Positions 1 through 58,436 of a stretch of DNA of 64,000 nucleotides are shown here, in pieces. The notes under the pieces are model-generated. The model made no database searches. It was given only the letters and a program-made list of their open reading frames with translations, and had not been told where the DNA came from. The DNA lies in the IMG/VR virus record IMGVR_UViG_3300027770_000026, positions 186,001 to 250,000 of that record; one strand, given 5' to 3'. The position numbers were made by a program, and so were the translations under genes. Within the stretch, counting starts at the first letter, position 1, and each line of letters starts with the position of its first letter.

Positions 1-2798
1 AATATGTCCTGGCTATGATTCCATTCAAACTGAATGTCGCCAGTTAAGCCAACAGACTTATAACTCAGAGGGAAGCCAATTTCGCTATCGTTAGTACCTG
101 TTCCTCGTTTGAACGAGAACAACTTGCTACCAATGAATGTGCTACCTACATATGTTGCTCGATCGCCAATGCTTGTTTTGTTAGAATCAAACAAATCAAA
201 CAGTGGTTCTTGATTGATTGCTGTTTTATTCTGCGACTGAACCCACTCATTGTTTAGATAATAAAAATTCTTACCTGCATTACTATTGCCGTCAGTAACT
301 ACGATACCATCATAATCGCTAACACTTGCAACTTCTGTTAACACAATATTAGGCTGATAGTCGTATGCTGTTAATTCAATATCGTCTAGTGATAATAGTG
401 TTGTTACTAGCGTAATTTCAATACGTTCTTCTGTACCAATGGTTACACCAGCAGTAGCTGTTACACCAGCACCCGGTGCTGCAATTACTACAGTCACTGC
501 GGTTGTAGAAGTAGTTGGGTTGGTAATAGTAATAAAATCTACTGCATCTCCAACTAATGTTGCAACTGCAGAACCACCAACAGGTAAACTAGTAACAGTA
601 TCTATTAGACTTACAGTAGGAGCTGTAGCATACCCACTTCCTCCGTTAGTTACTGTAATTTCTGTAATTGCAGGAATGTTATATACTACATCTGTTGAGT
701 ACAGATTAGAAGGTATAATATCATCACCATTTTTAAGTTCAATTGTTTTATTTCTAAAATCACCTTGAATGTTGAATACATCACCGGTGTTGGTAGCTAG
801 CCATTCGTATGGCGCTGTGCCAATTGCACCCGGATTGTATATAGACTTACGTCCTTCGTCTAGACTGGCAATTGTTACTTCGTAAATCTTGTTTCGTACC
901 TGCAAATCTGTATCAGCAGAGAACACAACTTTCATGCCGTTCTCTAGGCCAACACCATCCGCAGAATATCCAGATGCTGCCATCACGTTGCTTAGAGCAT
1001 CAATTTCTACTTGATCAAATGCATCTACTACTGCAACGTTACGACGTGCATGATTATACAATGCGATATCGTTGTCAAATTCCACAACAGGACGTTTGGC
1101 TTTTTCTGCTTGATCGATTACAAAATCTTGCTCCAGTACTTTAGCAGTATGCTCTAGTACGCGATAATGGAACCAACGATTACTGCGACTCCACGCATTC
1201 CCGTCTAGACTAGAACGTGCAATAGTAATGTAATGCTTGTTTAGAAAGCCGTAGTTGATATCTTGTTCTAGTCCGTTTGGTACTAATAAATCAACGTCAA
1301 GCAAACGAATACTGCTACCAACACCTTCTACGTAATATGTTTTGTTACGATAAGAAGCAGGTAGTACTGTTGCATCAAATGTTACTTTGAGTCCATTCAT
1401 GAACGTAACATCGCCAATTGCAAATCTCTGCTGTCCAATTACGTCTCGTTCAATATCGATAGACGGGACGCCAGTGAATGCCGATGCTGTAGTTGGTACT
1501 TGAATTGTACTAGACTGTTGGATTGGGCTACCTGTCCAACTTGGACCAACTACATATGGGAATACCGGATCGTTAGCGTTGTCAACTGTTAAGAAGTATG
1601 CATACGTTCCGTTAGGGAAATCTGGTGTTACGCAAAAACGTCCATTGTTAACGTCAAGTGTTCCTAGATTTGCAATGTATTCGTAGTCTTCAACATATCT
1701 ACCGTCTGGTGTGCCGCGAACAGCAGTTGCACCTTTGATGCGATAGCTGCTGGTCATGTTAATGATTGAGCCGCTGCCGTCTGCGTTAGTATAACCACGT
1801 GGTCCGTAGATTGGGAAGCCGTCAAACGCATACCCTAGTATCTTACTATGTCCGCTAACTGAATCGCCTAGTTCTGAACTGTATGCGTGATAGTGGAACA
1901 CACCGTTAATGTCTGGATGTCCTGCAAATTCTGTAGGACTGACGTGCTGCACATCCTCGCTGCGATTAAATTCATTTGCTAAATTGCTGCTAGTACTATC
2001 AAATGTAATTGTGTGATTTTCTAAGAAAGGCGTGTTTATTGTATACGTAACATCATTAAGCTTTTCTTTGCTGCCCATTGTGTATGTGTAAAATGGGTGC
2101 CCGTTAGTTGCAACGCCAATCATACTGCCTGCGGGTACAGCTACTTGATTCTGACTCTGTCTAATCTGCGGATCACGTGGTAGCTTAAATGCCACTGTTG
2201 TGTCTGCAACTGCTCGTGTTACATCTACTGTAGGAAAACTATCAACCAATGAAGATTGATTACTAGTTGACACGTATATATTTTTATCGTCGTAATAACC
2301 TAGTACTGTATTGTCAAATGCGGACAATTTAATGAACAGTAAGTTGGCAATTGCAAAACTTATTGGTATTGCGTCCGGGCCGTTGGGCATCCAGTAGTAC
2401 TGATCATAGTTGATCAGCTTGTCTAAACTAATCTTAAAATCAGCTGGTTTAAAATCGTCAGCTAGTGCGTTTTGTAGATTATTTTTATCAACACCATAAT
2501 AGTTTAGGGCATTGATAAAGTCTTCTGCAGTAGCACCAAAGGCATATGTACCATCTGGGTTCACTGATGCTGCACCAACTTCAAGTTGATAAGCGTTTCT
2601 TAGTTCATTATTCTCTGTTAAGAATCTATCAGTTGACGTTGCACCTTTTGCATATCTACGTCCTACATAGTAATTCAATTGTCTTGGGTCACTTGGGGTT
2701 ACCAAATGGTCCATCGTAGATGCTAAGAATCTACGGTTTAGACTTGTTTGAAATACTTCTGGTAAAAACTTGTAACTGCGTTGAAATGCTTTAGCCAT
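1..2798 (-). CDS. Large baseplate wedge / virion structural protein (gp7-like position), truncated by window edge; contains a YHYH domain
   Basis: ATG at 2798 (MAKAFQRSYKFLPEVFQT); frame open where spot-checked down to the window start; directly follows gp6-like gene; GHPDINGVFHYH...ILGYAFDGFPIYGPRGY...NGRFCVTPDFPNGTYAYF is YHYH-like; not in the supplied ORF track because it has no stop in the window. Confidence 0.7.
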   Translation of the reverse strand, partial: MAKAFQRSYKFLPEVFQTSLNRRFLASTMDHLVTPSDPRQLNYYVGRRYAKGATSTDRFLTENNELRNAYQLEVGAASVNPDGTYAFGATAEDFINALNYYGVDKNNLQNALADDFKPADFKISLDKLINYDQYYWMPNGPDAIPISFAIANLLFIKLSAFDNTVLGYYDDKNIYVSTSNQSSLVDSFPTVDVTRAVADTTVAFKLPRDPQIRQSQNQVAVPAGSMIGVATNGHPFYTYTMGSKEKLNDVTYTINTPFLENHTITFDSTSSNLANEFNRSEDVQHVSPTEFAGHPDINGVFHYHAYSSELGDSVSGHSKILGYAFDGFPIYGPRGYTNADGSGSIINMTSSYRIKGATAVRGTPDGRYVEDYEYIANLGTLDVNNGRFCVTPDFPNGTYAYFLTVDNANDPVFPYVVGPSWTGSPIQQSSTIQVPTTASAFTGVPSIDIERDVIGQQRFAIGDVTFMNGLKVTFDATVLPASYRNKTYYVEGVGSSIRLLDVDLLVPNGLEQDINYGFLNKHYITIARSSLDGNAWSRSNRWFHYRVLEHTAKVLEQDFVIDQAEKAKRPVVEFDNDIALYNHARRNVAVVDAFDQVEIDALSNVMAASGYSADGVGLENGMKVVFSADTDLQVRNKIYEVTIASLDEGRKSIYNPGAIGTAPYEWLATNTGDVFNIQGDFRNKTIELKNGDDIIPSNLYSTDVVYNIPAITEITVTNGGSGYATAPTVSLIDTVTSLPVGGSAVATLVGDAVDFITITNPTTSTTAVTVVIAAPGAGVTATAGVTIGTEERIEITLVTTLLSLDDIELTAYDYQPNIVLTEVASVSDYDGIVVTDGNSNAGKNFYYLNNEWVQSQNKTAINQEPLFDLFDSNKTSIGDRATYVGSTFIGSKLFSFKRGTGTNDSEIGFPLSYKSVGLTGDIQFEWNHSQDI

Positions 2799-32056: not shown

Positions 32057-32730
32057 AATCTTACAAAGTGATAGTCGCCGTCAACACCTAGACCACCGGA
32101 CGAGAACATACCCGATACGTCAGTAAATCCAATAGTTTTTAAATATTCCCGTACTTCGTTTACACTAGGTGCACCAATATTAAAATCTACATGTTGTAAT
32201 TCTAAAACTAGATGTTTGCAGTGTTCTAACATCTTAGTTGCACCTTTGATAATATCTAGTTCTGCACCTTGCACATCCATCTTAATAAGATCAGGCAAGG
32301 GATATCCTTTGTTAGCAACTATAGTATCTAGAGTCATTGCTATCTTTGCAACAGCAGTGCTATCGGGGAATACACAGTTGCCAAATGTATGTGCTACATT
32401 TTCTTGATAGTATGAATTGCCACCTGGCTGTTCTACATTTTCGTAGAACTTAACTTCCTTGTTGTCTTGATCGGATAACACACCAATGTTATATTTGTAT
32501 CCACTTTCTTGATATAAAAATTCTGCAGCTTCCATACCGTCAAACAAGATATATTCTGCATTAGGCCAGACAGGCTTCATTGAGTTAGTCCAATGCATAA
32601 CACACGCACCAATGTCGTATATTACTTTTGGTTCAAAATTTAGATCATCACGTAACTTTTTCAAGTAATCAACATGTGATTTTGGAAAAAGTTCTAATCG
32701 TTGTCCCAATTGTCTTAGATGATCTTTCAA
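32053..32730 (-). CDS. FkbM-family SAM-dependent methyltransferase
   Basis: VIYDIGAC...FDG...TLDTIV...PDLIKMDVQGAELDIIKGA. Confidence 0.85.
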   Translation of the reverse strand: MKDHLRQLGQRLELFPKSHVDYLKKLRDDLNFEPKVIYDIGACVMHWTNSMKPVWPNAEYILFDGMEAAEFLYQESGYKYNIGVLSDQDNKEVKFYENVEQPGGNSYYQENVAHTFGNCVFPDSTAVAKIAMTLDTIVANKGYPLPDLIKMDVQGAELDIIKGATKMLEHCKHLVLELQHVDFNIGAPSVNEVREYLKTIGFTDVSGMFSSGGLGVDGDYHFVRF

Positions 32731-35642
32731 GTCATACTCTTTTTTTTAGTATCCACAGGAGCGTAACCGGTCATTAGCCCAACCTTAAACGTAAATGCTC
32801 CTAGATGGTCGCACTTAATACTAGTGTCTACGTATATCCTGAATCCCTTGTTACGTGCTTTAGCACAGAAGTCGGTATCTTCGCTTATTGTATCCTTGTG
32901 ATCTAGTGCAACATGATATTCAAATTGCGGATATCCTACAGCACTAAATATCTCTCCCTTTGCCAACACACAACCAAATCCACATCCACCAATTTCAACA
33001 AGCGCATTATCGGGTAAATTTTGTAGTTCTGCACGATTCATACCGCCCCATTGATTAGGTAGGTAGATTTCCAATGCATGTGTGCCCGGAATACGCTGTA
33101 TATACAACCCGCTTACTATATCCACATTGTGGGATAGCATTTTCTTTAGTGTGTCGGGCGGGAATACGATATCGCTATCAACTGAGAACAGATAGTCGTA
33201 GTTTGCGGCCCAACTTGCGATTAGATTTCTTACCTGATCCACACGGTATCCAAACGTATATCTAAATTCTGTTTCATATCCATCTGGTATTTCAAGATCG
33301 TAAATGCTCTTGAACGTATCTACTTCAATATTACGTGCTGTTGGAATAGCAATCAGAATCTTCTTCTTTTTTGAAGTAGGTAATACAGTATTGCTAGCCG
33401 TTGGCATAGTTATAGTAGTAGTAGGAACTACTGGAGGCGTAATAGCAAGAGAAGGTGTTGCGGTTGGGTTAGTGAGCGATACACCTAGTTCTCTGAGAAT
33501 TTCTAATGCTGGTTTCCTCGCCTCAGTTCGTGGCGGCGGGTTTGCCGGCGGCAATTCTGGTATCGTAAACATTGGTCCGTCTTTCATTTTAATAATGTTC
33601 CTTGCATTTCTTGTTTGCTCGTCGCCGTTGATCTTGTAGTCGTTAAGTGGACTAGCATCATTATAATTATAAACAACTCTAGACACAACCGTAATTTTGT
33701 CTGGATCGGCTTGTTCTAGTACAGAGTAGAAAATAGAGCCGTCACCGCCAGCCTTAAACCAATTACCATCTGCATCTTTAAACATCTTGTCGTCCACAGC
33801 ATTGAGTAGACGCTTTCTGAAAGTACGTAAATGGGTGTAGGGCATGATCCAATTGAAATGATGATTGCGATAGTTTTTGGTATCACGCACATGTTTTGGA
33901 TATGGTTGCGATATCAACGGAATGTTATCAACTATACTCCAGCACGACCCATAACTAAATTCTGTGCCTTCGTGATAGATATTATTATAGTAGTGGAATA
34001 TGTCGGGATCGTTAACTAACCAGTCGTCGCCATCTAGGATCATAACTATATCGTCATCTCCAAGATGTTCTCTAATAGCTGATACCTGATTGCATACAGC
34101 ACCAACATTTGTTTCACTTTCTATTAGAGTAAACCTACCGTCTAATTCGTCTGGTAAGTCCTTCATTACATCCATGATAACATCGACACTATTGTCGGTT
34201 GATGCATCATTGATCAAGTACAGATGATAGTTATCGTAGTTCTGCTGGGCAACACTTTCAATACACTTGCGCAGATAATTTGCTGCATTATAAAATGTGC
34301 TAATAACTGCAATGCGTTGTTGTACGCCACGTGTTGGAGTGCCCCACTCTTCGTTGTTACTAAATCTACGTCCAAACACTTGATGTACTTTAGCATTAAT
34401 ATCTGCAGCTCTGCGGTAGTCTGTTACTGGTAAGAATTGATTTAGCTTCTTATAAAAATGCTGCTTCCACTGTACTGCAACAGTATCCCATGTACAGATA
34501 TCGCGTATCTGATTACATGCATACATCTTTTGCTGATGTAGGTATGTGTTGCGGTATGCATTTATAGTCATTTCCGCAAACTTCTGAGACTGTGTTTCCG
34601 GATTGATCTCGGGGAATAGTCCGTTTGGCTCTACGGCATAGTCTAGCTGATAGCAAGCTAGGTTAACAGCAGTTTCTTCCAGTGCACCAAAACGACTGCA
34701 AAGTACTGGAGTATTGTAGTATAAGGATTCTAAAGTGGAAATGCCAAACGTTTCGGGAAACGCACCAGGCATGATCATAAAGCTTGCACGACTGAGCAAC
34801 TCTGCAATTTCGCTTTGCTTGATAATACCAGTAAACTCTACCGCTAACTGCGCATACAATGGATTAGCTGCATACTCGCGTAGCTTCTTTTCCTGTGCAT
34901 CGGGTTCTGCATTATCTCTGAAACGATAGTATCCCCCTACTACTTTGAGCTGTGCATCGGGAATGTTAGCTTTAACTTGTGGCCAAATACGATCTAGTAA
35001 TGGGACAAGTCCCTTGGTTACGCTAGCATTGTACACAAAAAGATTGCGGTCTTTGGCAGCAACATCTACTTGATCAATATATTTTGTCATACCATTACGT
35101 GTAACAAATACCTTGTTCTTGAGTACTTCAAAGTTACGACGCTTACCGCCGTGGTGGCAGTTAGTGACATACGCTGTGTGGAAGTCGCTCAGAGTAAAGA
35201 TCTCATCGATTTGCCTATTCAACAGCAGATCTTCTAGTATCTCGTCCCCGCCGCAGAACGTGTCGTGCATCCACAACACTTTATGTTTGGCATTTTTAAC
35301 CAGCTGCTGATATCTTTTGCAATGATATCCAAACTGCGCCCAGTGTGCCCAATGATGTTCTAATGAGAAAGGAACAACAGTACGCGACCCAATCACAATG
35401 TCCGCAGTATAATCATTTGGTACATCAAGTCGAGTATGATCTACATATGTCACACCGTCAAACACACCTTCCTGCGCATGAGAATCTATGCAGTTGTTGA
35501 ATACCGTGACTTTAAATCCTAGCTTTGCAAGCTCTTTGGATATCAAAATTACAGCACTTTCACTACCGCCTAACCCGCGTTTGCTTAACGTATTACCATC
35601 ATAGGTAAGTCCAAGCACGTCAATTATTGCTACAGATAACAT
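32727..35642 (-). CDS. Multi-domain glycosyltransferase (GT-B/GT4-like + GT2 + second GT2-like)
   Basis: GLGGSESAV...ETFGISTLESL (GT4); ISTFYNAANYLRKCIESV...INDASTD...LDGDD (GT2); ILIAIPT...VDSDIVFP...GFGCVL (GT2-like). Confidence 0.85.
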   Translation of the reverse strand: MLSVAIIDVLGLTYDGNTLSKRGLGGSESAVILISKELAKLGFKVTVFNNCIDSHAQEGVFDGVTYVDHTRLDVPNDYTADIVIGSRTVVPFSLEHHWAHWAQFGYHCKRYQQLVKNAKHKVLWMHDTFCGGDEILEDLLLNRQIDEIFTLSDFHTAYVTNCHHGGKRRNFEVLKNKVFVTRNGMTKYIDQVDVAAKDRNLFVYNASVTKGLVPLLDRIWPQVKANIPDAQLKVVGGYYRFRDNAEPDAQEKKLREYAANPLYAQLAVEFTGIIKQSEIAELLSRASFMIMPGAFPETFGISTLESLYYNTPVLCSRFGALEETAVNLACYQLDYAVEPNGLFPEINPETQSQKFAEMTINAYRNTYLHQQKMYACNQIRDICTWDTVAVQWKQHFYKKLNQFLPVTDYRRAADINAKVHQVFGRRFSNNEEWGTPTRGVQQRIAVISTFYNAANYLRKCIESVAQQNYDNYHLYLINDASTDNSVDVIMDVMKDLPDELDGRFTLIESETNVGAVCNQVSAIREHLGDDDIVMILDGDDWLVNDPDIFHYYNNIYHEGTEFSYGSCWSIVDNIPLISQPYPKHVRDTKNYRNHHFNWIMPYTHLRTFRKRLLNAVDDKMFKDADGNWFKAGGDGSIFYSVLEQADPDKITVVSRVVYNYNDASPLNDYKINGDEQTRNARNIIKMKDGPMFTIPELPPANPPPRTEARKPALEILRELGVSLTNPTATPSLAITPPVVPTTTITMPTASNTVLPTSKKKKILIAIPTARNIEVDTFKSIYDLEIPDGYETEFRYTFGYRVDQVRNLIASWAANYDYLFSVDSDIVFPPDTLKKMLSHNVDIVSGLYIQRIPGTHALEIYLPNQWGGMNRAELQNLPDNALVEIGGCGFGCVLAKGEIFSAVGYPQFEYHVALDHKDTISEDTDFCAKARNKGFRIYVDTSIKCDHLGAFTFKVGLMTGYAPVDTKKKSMT

Positions 35643-35727: not shown

Positions 35728-38700
35728 ATGGCTACTTTTAACTTAATTCAGATGAAGCGCAGTGCAACTCCGGGAAAAGTCCCCACAACACAGGACTTAT
35801 CGCTGGGAGAATTTGGTATAAACACTTACGATGGTAAGGTTTTTATCAAAAAGGACGACGGTACGCCTAGTATCGTTGAAGTTGGCGTCAGAGGCGCCAC
35901 TGCAGTTCAAAATGTATTTTATGTAAGTAAAAGTGGTAATGATGCAAACGACGGAAAGAGCCTAGATAAGTCCAAACTTACAATTAAGTCTGCTGTAGCA
36001 GCAACTCGCGCATTAGTTGCAACTGCAACTGCGACCGTAGCCAATGGGTCAATTACTGCATTATATGTAACAAATCCAGGCGCCGGGTATGAATTACCCT
36101 TAATCCCAACCGTCACAATCTTTGGCGACGGTACCGGAGCAAGAGCAGTACCTATTATCAGTAGCGGATCAGTTATAGGTTTTACAATACTAGATAGAGG
36201 TATTGACTACACTTACGCCGATGTATACATAACACCGGCTGGCGCAGGACGCACTGGTGCAGGCTCAACCATATTTGTCAAGAGCGGCGACTATACAGAA
36301 GATAATCCAATTTACATCCCAGCCGGAGTAAGCATTGTTGGCGACAGTTTGCGTTCGGTGACAATTCGTCCGCAAAACACAACGCTGGACTTGTTTTGGG
36401 TTAATAACAAGAGCTACTTTACTGAAATGACTTTCAGAGATCATAAGGCTCCGGCTGCAATTATCGCATTCCCCTCAGTTGACATTACTGGCATTGAAAA
36501 TACCAATCCTGCCCGTGTAACGTTCTCGGGAGTATTCATATATGACAGAGTTAAATGTTCACGTGACGTTGGACTTATTGTAGATGCTCTTGCACAAGAC
36601 ATTAAATTTCCTGGTCTAGATGGCACAAGCCAAAGCATGTTTGCTGGCTTGCAGTACTGGACACAAAGTGGATACAGTATTCCAAATGTGTACCCAACAT
36701 CAGAAGTAACAGCAACACTGGGCGCACTTGCTCAACTTAAACTAGAAATTGCTGCGTTGCTTGGACCGGTGATGACTATAACTACGGACTCACTAGTTGA
36801 CGTAATTATTAACATATTAAATGGTACAACAAATCCTGCTACAGTCACGGATCTGATAGTACCAAACGGTACAACAGCAATTACAGCAACGGACGTTGTT
36901 AACGCATACGCTGACATACAAGCAGCAAAGACTACAATTATAGATAATATTATTAACTGGATTAACACTGTTGGTGCTCCGGGCATAACTTACGACGAAG
37001 CCCTTTGTCGCAGAGACCTTGGTTATATCATTGACAGTGTGTGCTACGACTTGTTGTACGGCGGCAACCGTCAAGTAATTCAAAATGGTATCTACTACTT
37101 GGGGTTCTCGGAAACGGACACAGCAATTCCAGGTGAGATTCCTCAGGTAACTGCTGCATATAACTATCTAAAGAGTATTGTTCCTTTGGTCATTGAAGGA
37201 ACAGCAATTGCATCACCTCGTCAGACTAAGGTTGTACAAGTTACAACAGGTAGTAATGGCACCGTAACACAGTCTAATCTAGCAACTAGCAATATTGACA
37301 TGATATTAGATATTATTAATACCGGACCAGCTGCATACGTAACTGCTGGAACACGTACACCAATTGGTCTAGTTGCAGCAAGCGGCAATGCTACCAATGC
37401 ATATAACAAGTTAATAGCTAATAGAGATTTCCTACGTGCAGAAGTAATTGCTTACATTGATCAGGAGACAATTTCGTTTGATCGTGCCAAGTGCTATCGT
37501 GACCTTGGACTCATTGTGGATTCTATTGCAACTGACGTGACATTCACCGATAGAACACAAACAACTTTTGCAGGTATCCAGTATTGGAGTCAGGCTGCAC
37601 TAGCATCGTCTAGCGAAATAAATCCGGGTGAGATTGCAGCTACAATTAACGCATATACATATCTTAAAGCAATTGCACTAGATATTATTCAAGACATATC
37701 AACACATGTTCTATATACACCGGTGTCGTATCCTCGAGTGACAGCAGCATCTATACCTACATCTGCAGTAACCGACCCTACAGTTATTTCTGCTATTAGT
37801 GACAATTTTGATCTGTTACTTGATATATTGACCGATGGCAATACCAATAACGTAACAGAGCGTATTATTTCAAGTGGTTTGATTATTGCAGGCAATACAA
37901 CGCAGCAATATCATGCGGCATTACTCTTAAATGCTAACACAGATTTCTTTAAGGAACAAGTAACATTAAGAATTGCTAACCAATTCCCGTTGTTAGTATA
38001 CAATACCGCTACTTGCGAGCGAGACGTACAATATGTTACTAGTTGCATAAGCAGAGACAATCTATTTGGTGGCAATCGCCAGACTGTGCAAGCAGCAGTA
38101 TACTATTATAGCTATCTAGCAGCTAGTACAGTACCAACAGAAATACAGCAAATTGAAAAAGCTTACAAGTATATCAAGATATTAGCTAGCTACATTATAC
38201 GTGGGCTACCAATGCCTTATGTATATCAAACTGGAGAATTACAAGACTTTGTAACTGCTTCCGGTGTTGGTACATTGACGCAAGTCACAGTGGCACAGAA
38301 CCTAGTAGATTATATGTTGGGCATCATCAATGATAAAACAACAGCAGATGCACCTGGATACGCCGGCATCTCAGAATTTAGTACAACGTATCGTCGTGCG
38401 GGCGAGCAATTACTAGCCAACAAAGAATTCATTAAGGCAGAAGTTGTTGCGTACCTAGAAGGATACACGTATAACCGTACAACATGTTCACGTGACACCG
38501 GACTCATTGTGGATGCGCTGGTACAAGACTTATTGTTTGATGGCGATAGCCAATCAACATTTGCAGCAATCCAGTACTGGAGTCAGACAGCAGAACGTTC
38601 AATCCCAGCAGGAGAGATTGCAGCAACAGTAGCGGCAATTGACTTTGTTATCACTCAGACTAATGCATTGTCTATTAGAACAGCAGACAAGACTAATATT

Positions 38701-41700
38701 GAAAATGGTTTTGACTTAATAAGAAATCTATTGGATGAAACTGTTAACGTAGCAACAATCACCAGCGGCATAGTTCCTAACAGTATTGAACCTGATCGCG
38801 ATGCGCAAGCTGCGTATGATGCGCTACAAGCAGCCAAAGCAACAATCATTGACGATACGATTGCAGACATTGCAGGTACGTTCCCGTCATTTGATCAACC
38901 AATTACGGGCGCAACTGCAGCAAGTCCTGTTGTACTAACTATTACAGGTCACGCCTTTGCAGATGGTGACTCCATTAGAATCAACAACATTGAAGGCATG
39001 GTTGAGCTAAACGGCAATCGTTACTACACTAAGAACACTGGCGCAAATACCGTAGAGCTATACTTAGATGCTACATTGCTAACTGCTCTAGACGGTACAG
39101 GATTTACAGCGTACGAGACAGGCGGTTATGCAGATACACAGACTGCAGCGAAATGCCGCAGAGATTTGGGCTACATGATTGACAGTGTTAGCTTTGATTT
39201 GTTGTATAACGCTGACCCAACTAACACTGTTCAGTCTAACAGACAAGCAGTACAATCAGGCGTTTACTATTGGAATCACTCAACTACTGTAAGCATAGTA
39301 CCTGGCGAAAAACCAATTGTAACAGCAGCATACGATTACATCAAGACATTGTCGTCGTACATTGTTGAAGGACGCGAGGTTCCAACAGTATACGGTACAG
39401 TGCCACAAGTGATGCCAGAGGGGCCAATGGCAATTGGTACAACACAAGACGTTAACAAGATTACTGACAAGCTTGACCTGATGATTAACATTATCAATGC
39501 AGGCCCAAGTGTTGCACCAAATCCAGAACCAATTAGCCTAGCACGTATCGGTTCATTTAATTACAACCGCACCAAGTGCTCACGTGACTTAGGACTGATC
39601 GTAGACGCCATTGCACAGGACATTAAATTCCCAGGCACCAGCGGCGACAGTCAAACAGTGTTTGCTGGCCTGCAATACTGGACACAGAACGACGGGTATA
39701 GTATCTCAAACATTGCACCAAGTGCAGAAGTTGCAGCAACAGTTGGTGCACTAGTGCAGTTGAAAGCGCAAATCACTGCAGTTGCTGCAGCTACATCTGC
39801 TACAACAGATGAACTAATTGATCTTATCATAAACATTATCAATAGAATTATCGATCCAGCTGATGTTACCGATTTGATTATACCAAACGATGCGATCGCT
39901 AACACCGGAGCAATAGCTACAGCCTACGCAGCAATACAATCGGCCAAGACAACAATTCGCGCCAACATAGTTACTTGGGTTAACACTAACTATCCAGCAT
40001 TAGTATATAACTCTACAACTTGTAGTCGAGACGTTGGTTTTATAATTGACAGCGTATGCTATGACTTGTTGTATAACGGCAACCGTCAGGCAATTCAAAG
40101 CGGTATCTACTATCTAGGCTTCTCGTCAACTGATAGTGCAGTGGCAGGTGAAATACCACAGGTAACTGCCGCTTACACCTATCTAAAGAGCATACTGCCT
40201 TCTATCATTGAAGGGACACCATTGGCTACAACATATCAAACAGACGTAGCACAAGTTACATCGGGTAGCAGCGGTACACCAACACAGTCTACACTTGCAG
40301 CCGACGCAGTAGATATCATACTAGACATTATTAATAATGGTCCTGGTACATACCTTGACGCTGGCACACGTACTCCAATTGGTCTAGTTGCCGCTGGCGG
40401 TAATGCTAATAACACTTATACACGGTTGCAAGCTAATAGAGACTTTATCCGTGCAGAAGTAATTGCTTACATTGATACTACAGTTGTAACGTACGATCAT
40501 CTCAAGTGCTCACGCGACCTTGGGTTGATCGTTGACGCACTAGCACAAGACTTGAAGTTCCCAGGACTAGACGGCAACAGCCAAAGCATGTTTGCTGGCT
40601 TGCAGTACTGGACTCAAGCAGATGGTTATAGTGTTCCTGATGGATCTCCTAGCGAGAAGGCCGCTACACTTGATGCACTAGCATATCTCAAGTCGCAGGT
40701 TGCAGGATTGGCTGGTGTAACAATTGATTCAACTACAAATGCACTATTTGACACTATCATCGATATACTAGATGGTACAACACCTCCGGCTAGCGTAACT
40801 GATCTGATTGTACCAAACGGAACAACAGCAAGTGTTGTTACTGCAGTAACTGATGCATATGCTGCAATTCAAACAGCAAAAGCAACACTACCTGCTGCTA
40901 CAGTTGCATACATACAAGGACTACCTGCGTACTCGGGTCTAGTATTTGATACAGGATTGTGCGAGCGCGACGTTGGTTACATATTAGACAGTATTTCATA
41001 TGACGTACTGTATGGCGGTAATCGTCAGGCAATACAAAGCGGTATCTACTATCTAAACTTCTCAAGTACAGTGACTGCAATTCCAAACGAAGTACCGCAG
41101 GTAACTGCTGCGTATGAATACTTGAAGTCAATTATCCCATCTATTGTTACAGGTACACCGGTTGCAACACTATATCAAACAGAAGTTGCACAGGTAATCT
41201 CAGGTAGCAGTGGTGCAGGTGCAGCAGCATCCGTACAGGCAAATGTTGATTTGATATTGGATATCATTATCAACGGACCAAACGCTTATATTACTCCAGG
41301 TACAAGAACACCAATTGGACTAGTAGCAGAAACAAACGCAACTATACTGAATGCCTATAACAAGTTGGTAGCAAATCGTAGTTTCTTACGTGCAGAAATC
41401 ATTGCGTATATTGACTATGTACTACAGCAGAAGTATCAAACAACAGCTAACGCTGCATATCTACTAAACGCTAACCGTGCGTTCATTGTATCAGAGCTAA
41501 TTGGATTTACGGACGAAAACTACGCAATACAGCACCCATACTCGAGCGGAGATACTATTTCTATTCGTCAGGTTGTTGGTATGACAGAAGTCAATAACGG
41601 TTATATACATCAGATCACCAATGCAACCAACACCAACCCAGTTAGACTAACATTTAATAAGGGTCATGCCTTTGGAGATACTACTTCGATGAGACTATCT

Positions 41701-43545
41701 GCTGTAGGCGGAATGAACGAAGTTAATGGCAATCGTTACTATGCACGTTTCTTTAATACTACAGAAGTTGAACTGTTCAATGACGTTAAACTAACAGATC
41801 CTGTTGATGGAACACTGTTTGGTTCATACACCAGCGGCGGCCAGGCAGAAACAGACAGCTTCTATTATGTACGAAAGATAGATGGCGACAGCATTGATCT
41901 GTATCTTGATCGTGCGCTAACACAACCAGTTGATGCAACTAACTGGGGTTCGTATATTACCGGTGGTATTGCTGGAACTGGCGCATTACCAGTAAGCCCA
42001 TACGTACACAACTGCTCCAGTATCACTACAACTGGCACAGGTATGCGTGTTGACGGTAACTTGAGTACTGGATTGAAGTCTATGGTCCTCGACTCGTTTA
42101 CCCAAATTAACGAAGGTGGTAACGGGATTGAAATCATCAACCGCGGTTACGCACAGCTCGTATCCATTTACACCATTTGTACTGACATTGGTATTTTGTG
42201 TAAGGGCGGCGGCTTCTGTTCCGTTGCTAACAGTGACAGCAGCTTTGGTACATACGCACTAGTTGCGGATGGATTAAGTGAAGTATTGTATTCGGGTGTA
42301 ACAGACGGCGACTTGCAAACAGGCAAGGCTATCAACCTTAAGGGGCTAACGCACCGTCCAAACTATGGCGATGCGATGGACGTCACTAGTGAATTAATTG
42401 TCGCAGACGCATATATCGTAGCAGCTAGTGCAACTATTAACGATCCTGGCACAGGTTATAAGCCGGGCGATTTGATGGAACTCGACGGCATAGTAGGCAC
42501 TTCGCCAAAGTTCCGCGTATCAACAGTTAAGATTGTTAGCGCATCCGTTAATACCTTAGTATCGGGGTCACTTGCAATAGGTGATAGATTTACGTTCTCT
42601 AAGGGATATAGTACATCTGCTGTGCTTGAAGTAGCAACAGTTACGCCATCGGTTACATTTACTATTATCGAAGCTGGCGTTAAGAACACGGGAGTAACAG
42701 CTCTAACAAATATTAGTCCCGATATCTCGTCATCGGCTGCTGTAATAACAGTGGATCTGGTGTACGGAATTGAATCGGTCGGAGTTGCAGCACCATTTTA
42801 TGGCGAACTAATAGAAACTCCATCAAACCCATCTGTTACTATAACATCTACTGGTATTGGCGTAGATGCACTGCTAGACGTAATTTATTCGGTACGCTTG
42901 ACTTTTGACGATCCGCACTACTTTAGGGGCGACGAGCAGATTGTAGCTAGTGGGTTTACGGGTAGTAATAATCAATCGTTGCTAAACGGTAATACGTATT
43001 TTATCAAATTAACTAACAATGCGTACAAAGCAGATCTACACATAGACTCTGCTCTAGCACTGGGAGTTGATACATCACTGTATACTGCATCATATGATGG
43101 TGGTGGCACCGCTACACTACACGACTACTATACCGTAGTAACAGCAACAGAAGGACCAGTTGCAACTGCAGGCACATACGAAGGATTACGTCAAAGTCAG
43201 ATTGGACTAGAAATTGCTGTTAAGCGTCCAATTGTAGATGAATCTGCAGTTGAGTTCCGCCAACGTAGTATTGTATCGTCCTCGGGCCATACATTTGAGT
43301 ACATTGGTTCGGGAAATATACTAAGTACAGCAACACCAGAAGCGGGTGCTTATCCAATTGCAGCCAACGAAGTAGTTGAGCTGCGTGGAGGTAAAGCATA
43401 CTTTACTGGAACTAACGAACAAGGCGACTTTAAAATCGGTACTGAACTGGTAATTAATCGCGATACTGGTACAATCTCTGGTAGAACATTTAACAAGAGC
43501 TTGTTCGCAGTACTAACGCCATACATATTGGCACTCGAGGGATAA
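35728..43545 (+). CDS. Giant virion fibre protein: Mtd-N-like anchor, split beta-helix, ten tandem phycobiliprotein-like CxRD repeats, small beta-barrel repeats
   Basis: N-term IQMKRSATPGKVP..L.LGE.GINTYDG; FYVSKSGNDANDG and IFVKSGDYTE..PI.IPAGVSIVGDSLR beta-helix; CxRD repeats at Cys277-Cys1745; C-term SSSGHTFEYIGSG...FTGTNEQGDFKIG. Confidence 0.75.
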   Translation: MATFNLIQMKRSATPGKVPTTQDLSLGEFGINTYDGKVFIKKDDGTPSIVEVGVRGATAVQNVFYVSKSGNDANDGKSLDKSKLTIKSAVAATRALVATATATVANGSITALYVTNPGAGYELPLIPTVTIFGDGTGARAVPIISSGSVIGFTILDRGIDYTYADVYITPAGAGRTGAGSTIFVKSGDYTEDNPIYIPAGVSIVGDSLRSVTIRPQNTTLDLFWVNNKSYFTEMTFRDHKAPAAIIAFPSVDITGIENTNPARVTFSGVFIYDRVKCSRDVGLIVDALAQDIKFPGLDGTSQSMFAGLQYWTQSGYSIPNVYPTSEVTATLGALAQLKLEIAALLGPVMTITTDSLVDVIINILNGTTNPATVTDLIVPNGTTAITATDVVNAYADIQAAKTTIIDNIINWINTVGAPGITYDEALCRRDLGYIIDSVCYDLLYGGNRQVIQNGIYYLGFSETDTAIPGEIPQVTAAYNYLKSIVPLVIEGTAIASPRQTKVVQVTTGSNGTVTQSNLATSNIDMILDIINTGPAAYVTAGTRTPIGLVAASGNATNAYNKLIANRDFLRAEVIAYIDQETISFDRAKCYRDLGLIVDSIATDVTFTDRTQTTFAGIQYWSQAALASSSEINPGEIAATINAYTYLKAIALDIIQDISTHVLYTPVSYPRVTAASIPTSAVTDPTVISAISDNFDLLLDILTDGNTNNVTERIISSGLIIAGNTTQQYHAALLLNANTDFFKEQVTLRIANQFPLLVYNTATCERDVQYVTSCISRDNLFGGNRQTVQAAVYYYSYLAASTVPTEIQQIEKAYKYIKILASYIIRGLPMPYVYQTGELQDFVTASGVGTLTQVTVAQNLVDYMLGIINDKTTADAPGYAGISEFSTTYRRAGEQLLANKEFIKAEVVAYLEGYTYNRTTCSRDTGLIVDALVQDLLFDGDSQSTFAAIQYWSQTAERSIPAGEIAATVAAIDFVITQTNALSIRTADKTNIENGFDLIRNLLDETVNVATITSGIVPNSIEPDRDAQAAYDALQAAKATIIDDTIADIAGTFPSFDQPITGATAASPVVLTITGHAFADGDSIRINNIEGMVELNGNRYYTKNTGANTVELYLDATLLTALDGTGFTAYETGGYADTQTAAKCRRDLGYMIDSVSFDLLYNADPTNTVQSNRQAVQSGVYYWNHSTTVSIVPGEKPIVTAAYDYIKTLSSYIVEGREVPTVYGTVPQVMPEGPMAIGTTQDVNKITDKLDLMINIINAGPSVAPNPEPISLARIGSFNYNRTKCSRDLGLIVDAIAQDIKFPGTSGDSQTVFAGLQYWTQNDGYSISNIAPSAEVAATVGALVQLKAQITAVAAATSATTDELIDLIINIINRIIDPADVTDLIIPNDAIANTGAIATAYAAIQSAKTTIRANIVTWVNTNYPALVYNSTTCSRDVGFIIDSVCYDLLYNGNRQAIQSGIYYLGFSSTDSAVAGEIPQVTAAYTYLKSILPSIIEGTPLATTYQTDVAQVTSGSSGTPTQSTLAADAVDIILDIINNGPGTYLDAGTRTPIGLVAAGGNANNTYTRLQANRDFIRAEVIAYIDTTVVTYDHLKCSRDLGLIVDALAQDLKFPGLDGNSQSMFAGLQYWTQADGYSVPDGSPSEKAATLDALAYLKSQVAGLAGVTIDSTTNALFDTIIDILDGTTPPASVTDLIVPNGTTASVVTAVTDAYAAIQTAKATLPAATVAYIQGLPAYSGLVFDTGLCERDVGYILDSISYDVLYGGNRQAIQSGIYYLNFSSTVTAIPNEVPQVTAAYEYLKSIIPSIVTGTPVATLYQTEVAQVISGSSGAGAAASVQANVDLILDIIINGPNAYITPGTRTPIGLVAETNATILNAYNKLVANRSFLRAEIIAYIDYVLQQKYQTTANAAYLLNANRAFIVSELIGFTDENYAIQHPYSSGDTISIRQVVGMTEVNNGYIHQITNATNTNPVRLTFNKGHAFGDTTSMRLSAVGGMNEVNGNRYYARFFNTTEVELFNDVKLTDPVDGTLFGSYTSGGQAETDSFYYVRKIDGDSIDLYLDRALTQPVDATNWGSYITGGIAGTGALPVSPYVHNCSSITTTGTGMRVDGNLSTGLKSMVLDSFTQINEGGNGIEIINRGYAQLVSIYTICTDIGILCKGGGFCSVANSDSSFGTYALVADGLSEVLYSGVTDGDLQTGKAINLKGLTHRPNYGDAMDVTSELIVADAYIVAASATINDPGTGYKPGDLMELDGIVGTSPKFRVSTVKIVSASVNTLVSGSLAIGDRFTFSKGYSTSAVLEVATVTPSVTFTIIEAGVKNTGVTALTNISPDISSSAAVITVDLVYGIESVGVAAPFYGELIETPSNPSVTITSTGIGVDALLDVIYSVRLTFDDPHYFRGDEQIVASGFTGSNNQSLLNGNTYFIKLTNNAYKADLHIDSALALGVDTSLYTASYDGGGTATLHDYYTVVTATEGPVATAGTYEGLRQSQIGLEIAVKRPIVDESAVEFRQRSIVSSSGHTFEYIGSGNILSTATPEAGAYPIAANEVVELRGGKAYFTGTNEQGDFKIGTELVINRDTGTISGRTFNKSLFAVLTPYILALEG
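36541..41520 (+). repeat. Ten ~150-170 aa protein repeats, alternating A/B types
   Basis: Cys codons at 36556, 37006, 37492, 38014, 38485, 39154, 39577, 40021, 40507, 40960. Confidence 0.9.
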
Positions 43546-43548: not shown

Positions 43549-43896
43549 ATGGCTTCCACTATACCTTTAAATACGTTTAAAACTGTTGCTTCTGCAATAA
43601 CTACGGCAGACGTAGACATCTATACTGCACCTGTAGGCATTACTACTATTATATTGATGGCGCAAGTCTCTAATATGAACGTAGGAACCCCGCTTGATAA
43701 ATGGGTAAGTGCTGCTCACAATGATGGCTCCACAATGAGATATTTGGTACGCGAATTTGGAGTCCCACCAAACGACAGTGTAAGTGTATTAACTGGTAAA
43801 TTAGTATTGGAATCAGGACAAAGTATCACTATGTCGGCAGAGGATAACGACTATCTAGAAGTTGTGTTAAGCATACTAGAAACATCAAACGAATAA
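43549..43896 (+). CDS. Small virion protein associated with giant fibre
   Basis: IPLNTFKTV...IYTAPVGITTIILMAQVSN...GKLVLESG...S.LET, typical partner of such fibres. Confidence 0.6.
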   Translation: MASTIPLNTFKTVASAITTADVDIYTAPVGITTIILMAQVSNMNVGTPLDKWVSAAHNDGSTMRYLVREFGVPPNDSVSVLTGKLVLESGQSITMSAEDNDYLEVVLSILETSNE

Positions 43897-43897
43897 T

Positions 43898-47794: not shown

Positions 47795-47796
47795 AA

Positions 47797-48003: not shown

Positions 48004-48058
48004 AATAAACTCCTTAAAGTTGCATGCTGAATATTTAAGCATGCAACAGTGGCCAGTC

Positions 48059-57232: not shown

Positions 57233-57787
57233 ATGAGCCTAAAAGAACTTACCAAAGACAAACATACTGCTGCGGAACATACGCCATTTATGCAGTCAGT
57301 GTTCAAACGCACAATGCCCGTTGAAATTTGGGCAGACTATACCCTAAACAAGATGCATTGGTACAATGCTATCGAAATGCGAGCAAGAGCTGCAGGTCTA
57401 TTGGAAGACCTTCCGGGGCTCGAACGTACATATCTACTGTATCAGGATTACAGAGCTATGTGTAAAGTTCCCAATCACTTCTACACTGTTAGCACCATGC
57501 GCTACTACACATACATTATGGATTTAGTTGATGTTGATGCCATCATGGCCCACTTGTATGTATGGCACATGGGCGACTTATATGGCGGGCAGATGATTAA
57601 GCAGATTATGGATCATGTGTCGCATCGTAATTTAGATTTTGATAATCCTGACTTGCTCAAAGCAAACATCCGAGTTAAGTTGCATGATGGCATGGCCAAT
57701 GAAGCTAACTGCGCATTTGATTGGGCAATACGTATTATGAACGAGTACAATGAGGCATTGACTAGTGGACATATGGCAAAAGGCTGA
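57233..57787 (+). CDS. hemO: Heme oxygenase
   Basis: LKELTKDKHTAAE proximal His helix; AHLYVWHMGDLYGGQMIK distal helix; EAN.AFDWAI. Confidence 0.92.
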   Translation: MSLKELTKDKHTAAEHTPFMQSVFKRTMPVEIWADYTLNKMHWYNAIEMRARAAGLLEDLPGLERTYLLYQDYRAMCKVPNHFYTVSTMRYYTYIMDLVDVDAIMAHLYVWHMGDLYGGQMIKQIMDHVSHRNLDFDNPDLLKANIRVKLHDGMANEANCAFDWAIRIMNEYNEALTSGHMAKG

Positions 57788-58436
57788 AGCTTGTGGCGAT
57801 AGAGTCGTGCAATTATTGCAGGGCATTGGCCCAGCAGTTGATCATCCTAGTAATCCTCCTACTACTTTTGGTTGGCACAGTTATATACACTCGTCTGACC
57901 GTGTACGCCGTGCCCACGTTGACATCATCGATGCAAGAGAGACACACAAATTATGGATCATGCACTGTTGCATATTTCCCCACGTAAATGATAATAGTCC
58001 TATTTTTGGTTTTGACATTATTAGCGGTCCTAGTCGCATTAGTGGAGCATTTCTAGACTTCTCTTTTGCAGGCGTTAATGACCATTCAATGATGAAATGG
58101 TTTGACCAACGTGTGACAAACTTAAATTGGAAGAAAGAGCGTCAACTGCCAGACTGGGCTGCTGCTATCTTTAGTCCTGCAATGGTAGCCGCAGGTGCAA
58201 TAACTGACGAACAGGAAGTTGATCAGTTAACAGGACTTGGTGTTGAATGTTTGGAGTACTATTTAGAGCATGTAGGCCGTCAGAGAAACGATCACAAGGA
58301 CAGTTATCACGAACAAAATAATTACTGTATAAACCAAAAGCGGAATCCACATACTCCACGGACTATGAATATATTGGGTCTTACGCCGGACCAAGTCACA
58401 GAGTTTTTCGAACACCTAATGTTTCCGGAACTTTAA
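57765..58436 (+). CDS. pcyX: Ferredoxin-dependent bilin reductase, PcyX/PcyA-like
   Basis: RRAHVDI, WIMHCCIFP, PIFGFDIISG, GAFLDFS, RQLPDWAAAIFS, QNNYCINQKRNPHT; overlaps hemO. Confidence 0.85.
   Translation: MDIWQKAEACGDRVVQLLQGIGPAVDHPSNPPTTFGWHSYIHSSDRVRRAHVDIIDARETHKLWIMHCCIFPHVNDNSPIFGFDIISGPSRISGAFLDFSFAGVNDHSMMKWFDQRVTNLNWKKERQLPDWAAAIFSPAMVAAGAITDEQEVDQLTGLGVECLEYYLEHVGRQRNDHKDSYHEQNNYCINQKRNPHTPRTMNILGLTPDQVTEFFEHLMFPEL

What the first reader, a model, noticed from the sequence alone, without database searches (positions are those of the whole stretch)
36541..41460. Repeats alternate strictly A/B like fused alpha/beta protomers, and helix order suggests ring closure
Seen: odd repeats are type A (CxRDxGLIVDAxxQD...FAGLQYW) and even repeats are type B (CxRDxGYIxDSxxYDLLYGGNRQ..QxGxYY), giving five pairs. 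Repeats 1 and 7 lack the preceding L.AN..F..E helix, while two such helices occur back to back after repeat 10 (AYNKLVANRSFLRAEII; AAYLLNANRAFIVSELI). Inference: circular permutation in which these last helices complete repeats 7 and 1, giving closed (AB)3 and (AB)2 blocks reminiscent of phycobiliprotein (alpha-beta)3 discs.
Basis: partly seen in the sequence, partly recalled or inferred. Interest (0 to 1): 0.6.

Follow-up and report, generated by a model that had tools for sequence, protein, structure and literature searches.

The report
Phycobiliprotein-like nested repeats in phage fibre
The shaft of a giant fibre protein of a large marine phage is built from ten repeats related to the light-harvesting phycobiliproteins. 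Every repeat keeps the pigment-attachment motif, and the phage also carries pigment-synthesis genes, so the fibre may be a pigmented, possibly light-sensitive, part of a virus particle.

Summary
One 2605-aa ORF (window 35728-43545, +) holds ten C-x-R-D repeats in strict A/B alternation. Repeats 1 and 7 lack the preceding helix, and two such helices without a repeat follow repeat 10.

The repeats are distant homologues of phycobiliproteins:
- A profile of B-type repeats hits phycocyanin alpha in the PDB at E 5e-4, and HHalign gives 94%.
- The AF2 model superposes on phycoerythrin, ApcE and allophycocyanin at Z 10.7-11.3.
- The Cys84-x-Arg86-Asp87 bilin-site motif is kept in 1889 of 1891 repeats family-wide.

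A and B are two old clades, but they are not side-by-side alpha/beta-like protomers. Range and contact data indicate that an A repeat and the next B repeat interdigitate into one nested two-lobed unit. Family-wide, A "opens" and B "closes" like brackets.

The helix anomaly is also family-wide. A block that starts without the helix ends with a spare one. The spare terminal helix docks in silico into a vacant helix-B site (0.82 against a best control of 0.17). Local complementation with nested insertion fits better than closed (AB)3/(AB)2 rings, which remain untested.

The phage lacks psbA in the 266 kb held. It encodes heme oxygenase and a PcyX-like bilin reductase, and these genes co-occur reciprocally with such fibres. 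A bilin-bearing fibre is plausible but unproven.

The parts
35728..43545 (+). ORF of the 2605-aa virion fibre protein (P0001)
   Evidence: PHROG tail-fibre families match the N-terminus (aa 7-257) and the C-terminus. Homologues in isolates are annotated as tail fibre or virion structural protein.
36541..37380 (+). Pair 1: repeat 1 (A, Cys277, no preceding helix B) and repeat 2 (B, Cys427, internal helix B at aa 386-414)
37381..37464 (+). Junction helix B (aa 552-579, L.AN..F..E type)
37483..38379 (+). Pair 2: repeat 3 (A, Cys589) and repeat 4 (degenerate B, Cys763)
38380..38460 (+). Junction helix B (aa 885-911). In AF2 model 2 its C-terminal half superposes on phycobiliprotein helix B next to the E helix of repeat 5.
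38476..39513 (+). Pair 3: repeat 5 (A, Cys920) and repeat 6 (B, Cys1143). No helix follows it. Best structural match to phycobiliproteins.
38893..39132 (+). E1_FCCH-like beta domain inserted between the internal helix B and the E helix of repeat 6
39568..40401 (+). Pair 4: repeat 7 (A, Cys1284, no preceding helix B) and repeat 8 (B, Cys1432)
40402..40482 (+). Junction helix B (aa 1559-1585)
40504..41331 (+). Pair 5: repeat 9 (A, Cys1594) and repeat 10 (B, Cys1745)
41332..41418 (+). First spare helix B (aa 1869-1897) with no repeat after it. pLDDT 88-95; grouped with pair 5 in the structural-alignment ranges.
41440..41523 (+). Second spare helix B (hT, aa 1905-1932), conserved in orthologues with 3, 4 and 5 pairs. 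Docks in silico into the vacant helix-B site of pair 3.
57233..57787 (+). Heme oxygenase gene (184 aa)
57765..58436 (+). Ferredoxin-dependent bilin reductase gene (223 aa), overlapping the heme oxygenase gene. Nearest isolate is the PcyA/PcyX-like gene of Pelagibacter phage Mosig (38.5% identity).

Best explanation
The stretch encodes the shaft of a giant virion fibre of a large marine myovirus-like phage. No psbA was found in the 266 kb held.

Fold and modules. The shaft is a tandem array of phycobiliprotein-like (globin-fold) repeats organised as five A-B modules. In each module the two repeats are not separate domains.
- Outer bundle: a helix-B equivalent, the Cys-bearing E helix and short F' helix of the A repeat, and the G and H helices of the following B repeat. 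It is phycobiliprotein-like. The placing of F' is inferred.
- Inner bundle: the G/H helices of A, the internal helix B and the E/F' helices of B. It lies nested inside the outer one. This assignment is inferred from alignment ranges only.
- Hence A must come before B. Family-wide, A 'opens' and B 'closes' like brackets, and strict ABAB is the simplest case.

Helix order. The odd helix order comes from blocks of whole A-B modules that begin without a helix B and end with a spare one. The spare helix fills a vacant helix-B site.
- The most economical reading is that each module in such a block uses the helix that follows it. This is a local circular permutation.
- On that reading, modules 4-5 with their helix are a nested insertion between module 3 and its own helix (hT).

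Pigment. Every repeat keeps the Cys-x-Arg-Asp bilin-attachment motif, and the phage makes bilin (heme oxygenase plus a PcyX-like reductase). The fibre is therefore probably a biliprotein, but this last step is inferred, not shown.
For: Homology to phycobiliproteins.
- Pfam PF00502 is the recurrent sub-threshold hit (E 0.03 and 0.027, in register).
- A profile of 88 B-type repeats hits phycocyanin alpha 6jpr_A at E 5.2e-4, aligning helix B, the loop and the Cys84 helix.
- HHalign of B-type repeats against CpcA gives 94.1%, P 1.3e-7.

Fold (VIA-align on model 2).
- The top 16 matches are all globin fold.
- Phycoerythrin 5aqd_M: Z 11.3, rmsd 2.5 A over 121 aa. ApcE 4xxi_A: Z 11.2. Allophycocyanin 8or7_A: Z 10.7, rmsd 1.9 A. 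Photocobilin 8j2w_B: Z 9.6.
- Unrelated rows fall below Z 7.

Topology.
- The matches run from the leading helix (model residue 1) to the last helix of the B repeat (residue 360).
- The docked helix touches the E helix of repeat 5 and the G helix, G-H loop and start of the H helix of repeat 6.
- A second bundle spans the G/H helices of A through to the E helix of B.

Bracket order of A and B.
- 58 of 71 distinct A/B strings are as balanced as their composition allows.
- 0 of 2000 shuffles reach the observed value, and the reverse convention looks random.

Helix complementation.
- There are 10 helices for 10 repeats.
- Orthologues with 3, 4 and 5 pairs have 1, 2 and 2 helix-less A repeats and 1, 2 and 2 spare helices.
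- 95-97 of 121 proteins give balanced patterns. The reverse order is never seen, and block sizes are 2, 4, 6, 8.
- Of the spare helices, 109 of 111 follow a B repeat. Of the helix-less repeats, 112 of 143 are A-type; most of the 28 B-type ones are unmatched and may be detection artefacts.
- Docking of hT on module 3: ipSAE 0.82 against a best control of 0.17. That mark was reached by 58 of 80 solved complexes and 2 of 110 mismatched pairs. Runs agree in at least 82% of contacts, and the partner's pLDDT is at least 69.

Motif. 1889 of 1891 HMM-detected repeats have C.RD; the other two have C.KD.

Bilin genes and co-occurrence.
Against: - No coordinates of the models could be read, so the topology rests on alignment ranges and one interface list from a predictor.
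- Pfam's gathering score is not reached (14.7 bits against 22.2).
- The A-type profile alone finds no phycobiliprotein, and its HHalign probability is only 45%.
- In AF2 model 2, hT stayed undocked (pLDDT 36-54) even though module 3 was present.
- The docking test would probably pass for any helix of this type on any vacant site, so it does not say which site hT uses.
- An out-of-phase insertion creates one helix-less repeat and one spare helix automatically, so paired counts alone do not prove that the two touch.
- For bilin binding: no lyase gene was found. Mosig has the enzyme cassette but no such repeat. The co-occurring phages may be one clade.
Confidence: 0.65

Rival explanations
1. One reading: leading helices serve the following repeat throughout. 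The last helix (hT) folds back onto repeat 1 and helix 1869-1897 onto repeat 7. This closes an (AB)3 and an (AB)2 ring, comparable to phycobiliprotein discs.
For: - Homology places helix B before the E helix, collinear with phycobiliproteins.
- AF2 model 2 put the leading helix 898-909 in the helix-B position of repeat 5.
- hT stayed undocked in both models that lacked repeat 1.
- The numbers of helix-less repeats and spare helices match in three architectures and are properly nested.
Against: - In model 1, four of the 11 pair-5 rows (those starting at model residues 353-362, the start of repeat 9) extend into helix 1869-1897, and none groups it with repeat 7.
- No alignment range spans a whole block.
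- The 3-pair orthologue has hT directly after pair 3, where local packing suffices.
- Blocks of 2, 4, 6 and 8 repeats would need rings of very different sizes.
- The reverse order of anomalies is never seen.
- A and B interdigitate rather than sit side by side like alpha and beta.
Confidence: 0.15
2. The spare helices and helix-less repeats are only scars of out-of-phase duplication or insertion. Repeats 1 and 7 are stable without a helix B, and the terminal helices are linkers to the next domains.
For: - Any insertion of a segment that starts at an E helix and ends after a helix B creates both anomalies at once.
- Repeat 7 is modelled at pLDDT about 90 without a helix B.
- hT has low pLDDT in both AF2 models and is followed directly by an FCCH-like domain.
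Against: - Both spare helices keep the full helix-B signature (31 and 24.6 bits).
- hT is conserved at 59-98% identity across orthologues that are about 41-58% identical overall.
- The structural match to phycobiliproteins rises from Z 7.5 to Z 11.3 when a helix B is present.
- Docking passes its controls.
- Only one of the two possible orders of anomalies occurs.
Confidence: 0.15
3. The repeats are phycobiliprotein-derived but carry no pigment. The globin scaffold was recruited as a rigid fibre building block, and C-x-R-D is kept for folding, a salt bridge or another ligand. The heme oxygenase and reductase genes serve the infected cell (iron release, host processes).
For: - No bilin lyase was found in this phage or in 24 related records.
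- The pocket is remodelled: a beta hairpin stands where helix F would be, and the bundle is split between two repeats.
- Mosig has the cassette without the repeat.
- Cyanophage homologues occur in genomes that were not hit by this reductase.
- The searched literature holds no report of pigmented phage particles.
Against: - C, R/K and D are kept in 1891 of 1891 repeats of proteins that are otherwise 25-45% identical. That is hard to explain by fold alone.
- The match to CpcA is best exactly around the attachment site.
- Co-occurrence is reciprocal.
- BBAG globins attach bilin without a lyase (PMC10151467).
Confidence: 0.45

Closest known systems
Phycobiliproteins (CpcA/CpcB, allophycocyanin, phycoerythrin; Pfam PF00502) and the ApcE bilin-binding domain
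   Same: - Globin-like helices B, E, F', G and H (Z 10.7-11.3, rmsd 1.9-2.5 A).
- Collinear helix B, loop and helix E.
- Identical K/x-C-x-R-D-x-G-Y...Y.L..GG signature at the Cys84 site.
   Different: - No X-Y hairpin was seen.
- The G and H helices come from the next repeat.
- Helix F is replaced by a beta hairpin with a conserved aromatic motif.
- Ten to about twenty copies are fused in one chain of a virion protein.
- Pfam's cut-off is not reached.
- Pigment and ring assembly are unknown.
BBAGs (bilin biosynthesis-associated globins; Rockwell et al. 2023, PMC10151467)
   Same: Distant phycobiliprotein homologues found outside phycobilisomes, in genomes that also carry a PcyA-type reductase. 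They are described as self-assembling biliproteins, so attachment without a lyase has a precedent.
   Different: BBAGs are cellular and are described as encoded in gene clusters with the reductase. Here the protein is a repeat array in a phage structural protein about 14 kb from the reductase. No BBAG sequence was available for comparison.
Giant fibre or structural proteins of T4-like cyanophages (for example S-PM2 p091, T4-like gene cluster 830; S-CAM1, S-WAM2 and ACG-2014 'tail fiber' proteins)
   Same: The same repeat family. S-PM2 p091 carries five C.RD repeats. They are annotated as tail fibre or virion structural protein.
   Different: These proteins are known only by generic names. Their repeats are more divergent (24-28% identity, spaced 131 aa apart in S-PM2). 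Their hosts make bilins themselves. The phycobiliprotein relationship was not found in the searched literature.
Photocobilins and globin-coupled sensors / RsbR N-terminal domain
   Same: Globin fold used for sensing. Photocobilin binds bilin (8j2w_B, Z 9.6). RsbR 3zta_A scores Z 11.3.
   Different: No sequence similarity was detected. They are single domains in cellular signalling proteins.

Membership tests
Phycobiliprotein family (Pfam PF00502) | Reaches Pfam's gathering score | tested here: not met
   Best scores are 14.7 and 14.9 bits against a cut-off of 22.2. Five of 88 B-type repeats reach E <= 0.01, best 3.1e-4. Precomputed hits on homologues are 'faint'.
Phycobiliprotein family (Pfam PF00502) | Profile-level sequence homology | tested here: met
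   B-type profile against the PDB: phycocyanin alpha at E 5.2e-4, with about 20 further phycobiliprotein chains listed. HHalign against CpcA: 94.1%, P 1.3e-7 over 58 columns. The A-type alone is inconclusive (45%).
Phycobiliprotein family (Pfam PF00502) | Globin-like fold with helices B, E, F', G and H | tested here: met
   On a predicted model only: Z 11.3, 11.2 and 10.7, rmsd 1.9-2.5 A, 101-121 aa aligned. The top 16 rows are all globin fold. The bundle is assembled from two repeats, which is not canonical.
Phycobiliprotein family (Pfam PF00502) | Cys84-x-Arg86-Asp87 chromophore site | tested here: met
   Present in 10 of 10 repeats here and in 1889 of 1891 family-wide; the other two have C.KD. 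It aligns with Cys84 of CpcA.
Phycobiliprotein family (Pfam PF00502) | N-terminal X-Y helical hairpin that joins alpha to beta | tested here: not met
   Sequence and structural alignments start at helix B (chain residues 45-63). There is no room for X-Y between repeats spaced 150-165 aa apart.
Phycobiliprotein family (Pfam PF00502) | Covalently bound bilin | not testable with these tools
   Only indirect evidence: the motif, the heme oxygenase and reductase genes, and co-occurrence.
Phycobiliprotein family (Pfam PF00502) | (alpha-beta)3 ring assembly | not tested
No oligomer was modelled.
A = alpha and B = beta subunit orthology | A and B each closer to a different subunit type | tested here: not met
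   HHalign scores: B against alpha 50.3, B against beta 33.4, A against alpha 32.4, A against beta 26.2. Both types are closer to alpha.
BBAG-type bilin-binding globins | Association with a PcyA-type reductase gene | tested here: met
   Same genome, 14 kb apart. Reductase present in 3 of 3 complete repeat-bearing records. Repeats present in 5 of 5 reductase-bearing records that are at least 60% complete. The genes are not adjacent.
Phage tail fibre | Fibre-type terminal domains and neighbouring structural genes | tested here: met
   PHROG tail-fibre families match both ends. Neighbours are the portal, major head protein, tape-measure-like protein and a collagen-like fibre. Presence in virions and trimeric state were not tested.

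The most novel reading that the evidence does not exclude
The fibre is a true biliprotein. Each of its ten Cys-x-Arg-Asp sites binds a bilin made by the phage's own heme oxygenase and PcyX-like reductase, or by the host in cyanophages.

This would explain why phages of non-photosynthetic hosts carry bilin-synthesis genes. It would also give virions a built-in chromophore array, a candidate photoreceptor for light-dependent adsorption.
Probability: 0.4. Interest if true: 0.95.

Novelty: new variant of a known kind. Interest (0 to 1): 0.8.

Why it matters
Two open questions would become directly testable.

First, the purpose of hemO plus pcyA/pcyX cassettes in phages of heterotrophs is called 'still enigmatic' in PMC11480375 (section 14), which raises a bilin-binding globin only as a possibility. 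Here a phage-encoded candidate acceptor with ten attachment motifs sits in the same genome and co-occurs with the cassette.

[quoted passage not shown] S-PM2's fibre protein p091 carries the same repeat.

Structurally, the nested split-globin modules and their bracket-like order are an unusual way to build a fibre. They also show how closed modules can be inserted into one another.

Tried and rejected
- Foldseek of the whole 726-aa model against the PDB gave only spurious transporter matches.
- The Atlas feature search gave no usable hit.
- megablast of the gene against isolated phages found nothing.
- The A-type profile against the PDB found no phycobiliprotein. Weak hits of both profiles to cholesterol-dependent cytolysins (E 0.025-0.05) cover a single helix and are taken as chance.
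- A word search with the single-repeat profile found only fragments of giant proteins, with no free-standing relatives and no phycobiliproteins.
Cyanobacterial phycocyanin genes were obtained instead with a degenerate motif pattern.
- CpeT lyase: none in this phage or in 24 related records.
- hT docking in AF2 model 2: low pLDDT, so no answer.
- The contig of the closest relative ends 4.7 kb after the gene, so synteny with the bilin genes could not be checked there.
- The single-protein search with the reductase found only a near-identical record; an alignment was needed.
- The idea that the window is a cyanophage was dropped. There is no psbA, the portal is nearest to PA5oct and Phosso jumbo phages, and the reductase is nearest to a pelagiphage.
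- A homotrimeric (AB)3 disc was considered but not tested.

Full report
**Setting**

The finding lies inside one ORF, window 35728-43545 (+), 2605 aa.
- The window is part of a 265,892-bp IMG/VR virus record estimated 80% complete.
- Neighbouring genes are a tape-measure-like protein, portal, major head protein, a 971-aa glycosyltransferase on the other strand and a collagen-like fibre protein.
- PHROG tail-fibre families match both ends of the giant protein, and homologues in isolated phages are annotated as tail fibre or virion structural protein.
- The phage is not an evident cyanophage. No psbA was found. The portal is 48-50% identical to those of the jumbo phages PA5oct and Phosso. Its bilin reductase is closest to that of Pelagibacter phage Mosig.

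**Check of the observation**

C-x-R-D occurs ten times, at aa 277, 427, 589, 763, 920, 1143, 1284, 1432, 1594 and 1745, with the A and B signatures alternating exactly as described.
- The five A-B pairs align with each other at 32-62% identity. Pair 3 holds an inserted E1_FCCH-like domain.
- A tree of 215 repeats from 14 proteins has one split that separates all 79 motif-A repeats from all 86 motif-B repeats (support 0.81).
Even repeats 2, 6, 8 and 10 are preceded by a variant of the same helix.
- A helix HMM finds exactly ten such helices for ten repeats. None precedes repeats 1 and 7. Two have no repeat after them: aa 1869-1897 (31 bits) and aa 1905-1932 (24.6 bits, called hT here).
- The finding's end coordinate cuts hT.

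**What the repeats are**

Several independent lines point to phycobiliproteins.
- A phmmer search of the array against PDB sequences gave weak allophycocyanin hits. Pfam PF00502 (Phycobilisome) was the only recurring, though sub-threshold, family, and its two hits were in the same register.
- More than 1000 metagenomic homologues of 1,866-4,260 aa exist, with up to 21 repeats.
- A profile of 88 B-type repeats hits phycocyanin alpha chains in the PDB (best E 5.2e-4). The alignment covers helix B, the B-E loop and the Cys84 helix, with the signature C.RD.GY...Y.L..GG shared.
- I obtained cyanobacterial CpcA and CpcB genes with a degenerate motif pattern. HHalign of the B-type profile against CpcA gives 94.1% (P 1.3e-7). 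Scores against beta subunits and for the A type are lower, and both types are closer to alpha.
- AF2 models of aa 1235-1960 and aa 898-1945 have mean pLDDT 79.7 and 78.2.
- VIA-align of the second model against 48,161 chains puts globin-fold proteins in the top 16 places: phycoerythrin (Z 11.3, rmsd 2.5 A, 121 aa), ApcE bilin-binding domains (Z 10.0-11.2), allophycocyanin (Z 10.7, rmsd 1.9 A) and photocobilin (Z 9.6). Unrelated rows fall below Z 7.
- Among 1891 repeats detected by an HMM of the E helix, 1889 have C.RD and two have C.KD. The HMM was trained on C.RD windows, but the 10-bit threshold would still admit repeats that lack the motif.

**Topology**

Model coordinates could not be read, so this part rests on alignment ranges and one interface list.
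- Phycobiliprotein matches start at the leading helix, which aligns to chain residues 45-47 onward (helix B). They end at the last helix of the following B repeat (model 1..360).
- Without a leading helix (pair 4 in model 1) the same proteins match from the E helix of A to the last helix of B, at Z 7.5.
- Other rows define a second bundle running from the G/H helices of A through the internal helix to the E helix of B.
- In the complex prediction, the docked helix touches one face of the E helix of repeat 5 and the G helix, G-H loop and start of the H helix of repeat 6.
- I infer that the outer globin-like bundle is helix B + E/F' of A + G/H of B, and that the inner bundle (G/H of A + internal helix B + E/F' of B) is nested within it.

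This explains why A must precede B. Treating A as an opening bracket and B as a closing bracket:
- 58 of 71 distinct A/B strings in the family are as balanced as their composition allows.
- Shuffles never reach the observed value (0 of 2000).
- The reverse convention behaves like random.
- The strings are related by descent, so this is not a probability.
- Strict ABAB, as here, is the simplest case. AABB, ABAABB and others occur in distant homologues.

**The helix anomaly**

The anomaly is conserved across architectures.
- The orthologue with 3 pairs has one helix-less A repeat (repeat 1) and one terminal spare helix (hT type, directly after pair 3).
- Orthologues with 4 and 5 pairs have two helix-less A repeats (repeats 1 and 7) and two spare helices.

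Across 121 proteins I wrote '(' for a repeat without a preceding helix and ')' for a helix without a following repeat.
- Balanced strings occur in 95-97 cases: '()' in 38, '()()' in 24, '()()()' in 4 and '(())' in 3.
- The order ')(' never occurs.
- Blocks hold 2, 4, 6, 8 or 10 repeats; odd sizes occur only twice.
- The spare helix follows a B repeat in 109 of 111 cases. 112 of the 143 helix-less repeats are A-type.
- An out-of-phase insertion would create both anomalies at once, so equal counts alone do not prove contact.

Three further observations speak for a structural role.
- Both spare helices keep the full helix signature.
- hT is strongly conserved among orthologues.
- hT docks onto module 3 (given without its leading helix) at ipSAE 0.82 (runs 0.84, 0.82, 0.78) against a best control of 0.17. 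That mark was reached by 58 of 80 solved complexes and 2 of 110 mismatched pairs. Runs agree in at least 82% of contacts, and the partner's pLDDT is at least 69. My own alignments were used, so the calibration holds only roughly.

**Which site each spare helix uses is not settled**

For local complementation (each module in such a block uses the helix that follows it, with modules 4-5 a nested insertion before hT):
- In model 1, four of the 11 rows for pair 5 (those starting at model residues 353-362) extend into helix 1869-1897. None includes the helix in front of repeat 9, and none links helix 1869-1897 with repeat 7.
- The lowest pLDDT at a junction lies between the helix and the next E helix.
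- The 3-pair orthologue needs no long-range contact.
- The order ')(' is absent.

- Helix B and helix E are collinear in phycobiliproteins.
- Model 2 placed the leading half-helix on repeat 5.
- hT stayed at pLDDT 36-54 in both models, neither of which contained repeat 1.

I rate local complementation as more likely. Closed (AB)3 and (AB)2 rings like phycobiliprotein discs have no direct support and were not testable within the size limits.

**Pigment hypothesis**

The window encodes a heme oxygenase (57233-57787) and an overlapping ferredoxin-dependent bilin reductase (57765-58436). This cassette resembles that of pelagiphage Mosig.

Forward direction, from 24 IMG/VR records chosen for carrying the repeat protein:
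- Five have the reductase, including all three that are at least 90% complete.
- Four have heme oxygenase next to it.
- None has psbA or CpeT.

Reverse direction, from 16 large records chosen only by reductase similarity:
- Ten carry the repeat protein, including 5 of 5 that are at least 60% complete and 2 of 2 that are at least 90% complete.
- None has psbA.

Further observations:
- Nine portal relatives, all fragments, have neither gene.
- A positive control for the repeat search worked.
- Mosig has the cassette but no repeat.
- Cyanophage carriers of the repeat, such as S-PM2 p091 with five C.RD repeats, infect hosts that make bilins.

Literature:
- The role of hemO plus pcyA/pcyX in phages of heterotrophs is described as enigmatic, with a bilin-binding globin mentioned only as a possibility (PMC11480375).
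- BBAG globins self-assemble with bilin (PMC10151467).
- Light-dependent adsorption has been ascribed to light-sensitive receptors or tail fibres (PMC6628666).
- No paper in the searched library describes phycobiliprotein-like domains in phage fibres.

The records may belong to one clade, no lyase was found, and the pocket is remodelled. I therefore put bilin binding at about 0.4.

**Verdict**

- The phycobiliprotein relationship, the two repeat classes and the completing role of the spare helices are supported.
- The alpha/beta protomer picture is not supported.
- Ring closure is not supported.

This is a new architectural variant of the phycobiliprotein/globin fold in a phage fibre, with a testable link to phage bilin synthesis.

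Noticed in passing
window 57233-58436 (+): Heme oxygenase and a PcyX/PcyA-like bilin reductase form an overlapping two-gene cassette in a phage in which no psbA was found. The nearest isolate is Pelagibacter phage Mosig.
   Followed up: yes
window 32727-35642 (-): A 971-aa protein with two glycosyltransferase regions lies directly upstream of the fibre gene and is transcribed divergently from it. The same arrangement is found on the contig of the 84%-identical homologue (L006). It may modify the fibre.
   Followed up: partly
window 38893-39132 and about 41530-42000 (+): E1_FCCH-like small beta domains occur once inside pair 3 and again right after the last helix. They match PDB chain 26dk_M, 'Structural protein' (E 3.8e-5).
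   Followed up: partly
window 43549-46039 (+): A 115-aa ORF (phrog_1276) and a 713-aa collagen-like tail-fibre protein follow the giant gene. The latter has a C-terminal domain shared with baseplate and long-tail-fibre families.
   Followed up: no
window 25773-27503 (+): The portal protein's nearest isolates are Pseudomonas phage PA5oct and Sinorhizobium phage Phosso (48-50% identity), not cyanophages. The host of this phage is unknown.
   Followed up: partly
L372 (Synechococcus phage S-PM2, p091, record 53491-63507): This protein of about 3300 aa (3306 aa lie in the locus), annotated as tail fiber protein, holds five C.RD repeats, four of them spaced exactly 131 aa apart. The unit is shorter than the 150-165 aa seen here. 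S-PM2 is the phage for which light-dependent adsorption was reported.
   Followed up: partly
window 9308-13702 (-): A 1464-aa protein with a lysozyme/endolysin-like region (aa 348-562), possibly a tail-associated lysin. It sits among further giant ORFs at 3-2798, 2800-6402 and 6864-9308.
   Followed up: no
window 46068-53925 (-): A block of metabolic and replication genes: ThyX, ATP-dependent DNA ligase, DUF2201 metallopeptidase/VWA, a QueD-like 6-pyruvoyl-tetrahydropterin synthase and an AAA ATPase. GC rises to 0.52 at 52-54 kb.
   Followed up: no
G013, G035, G040, G041 (IMG/VR records): Some related jumbo phages carry two to four separate giant proteins with these repeats (for example 2856 and 3385 aa). 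Complete genomes of 190-197 kb carry short versions of 979-1125 aa.
   Followed up: no
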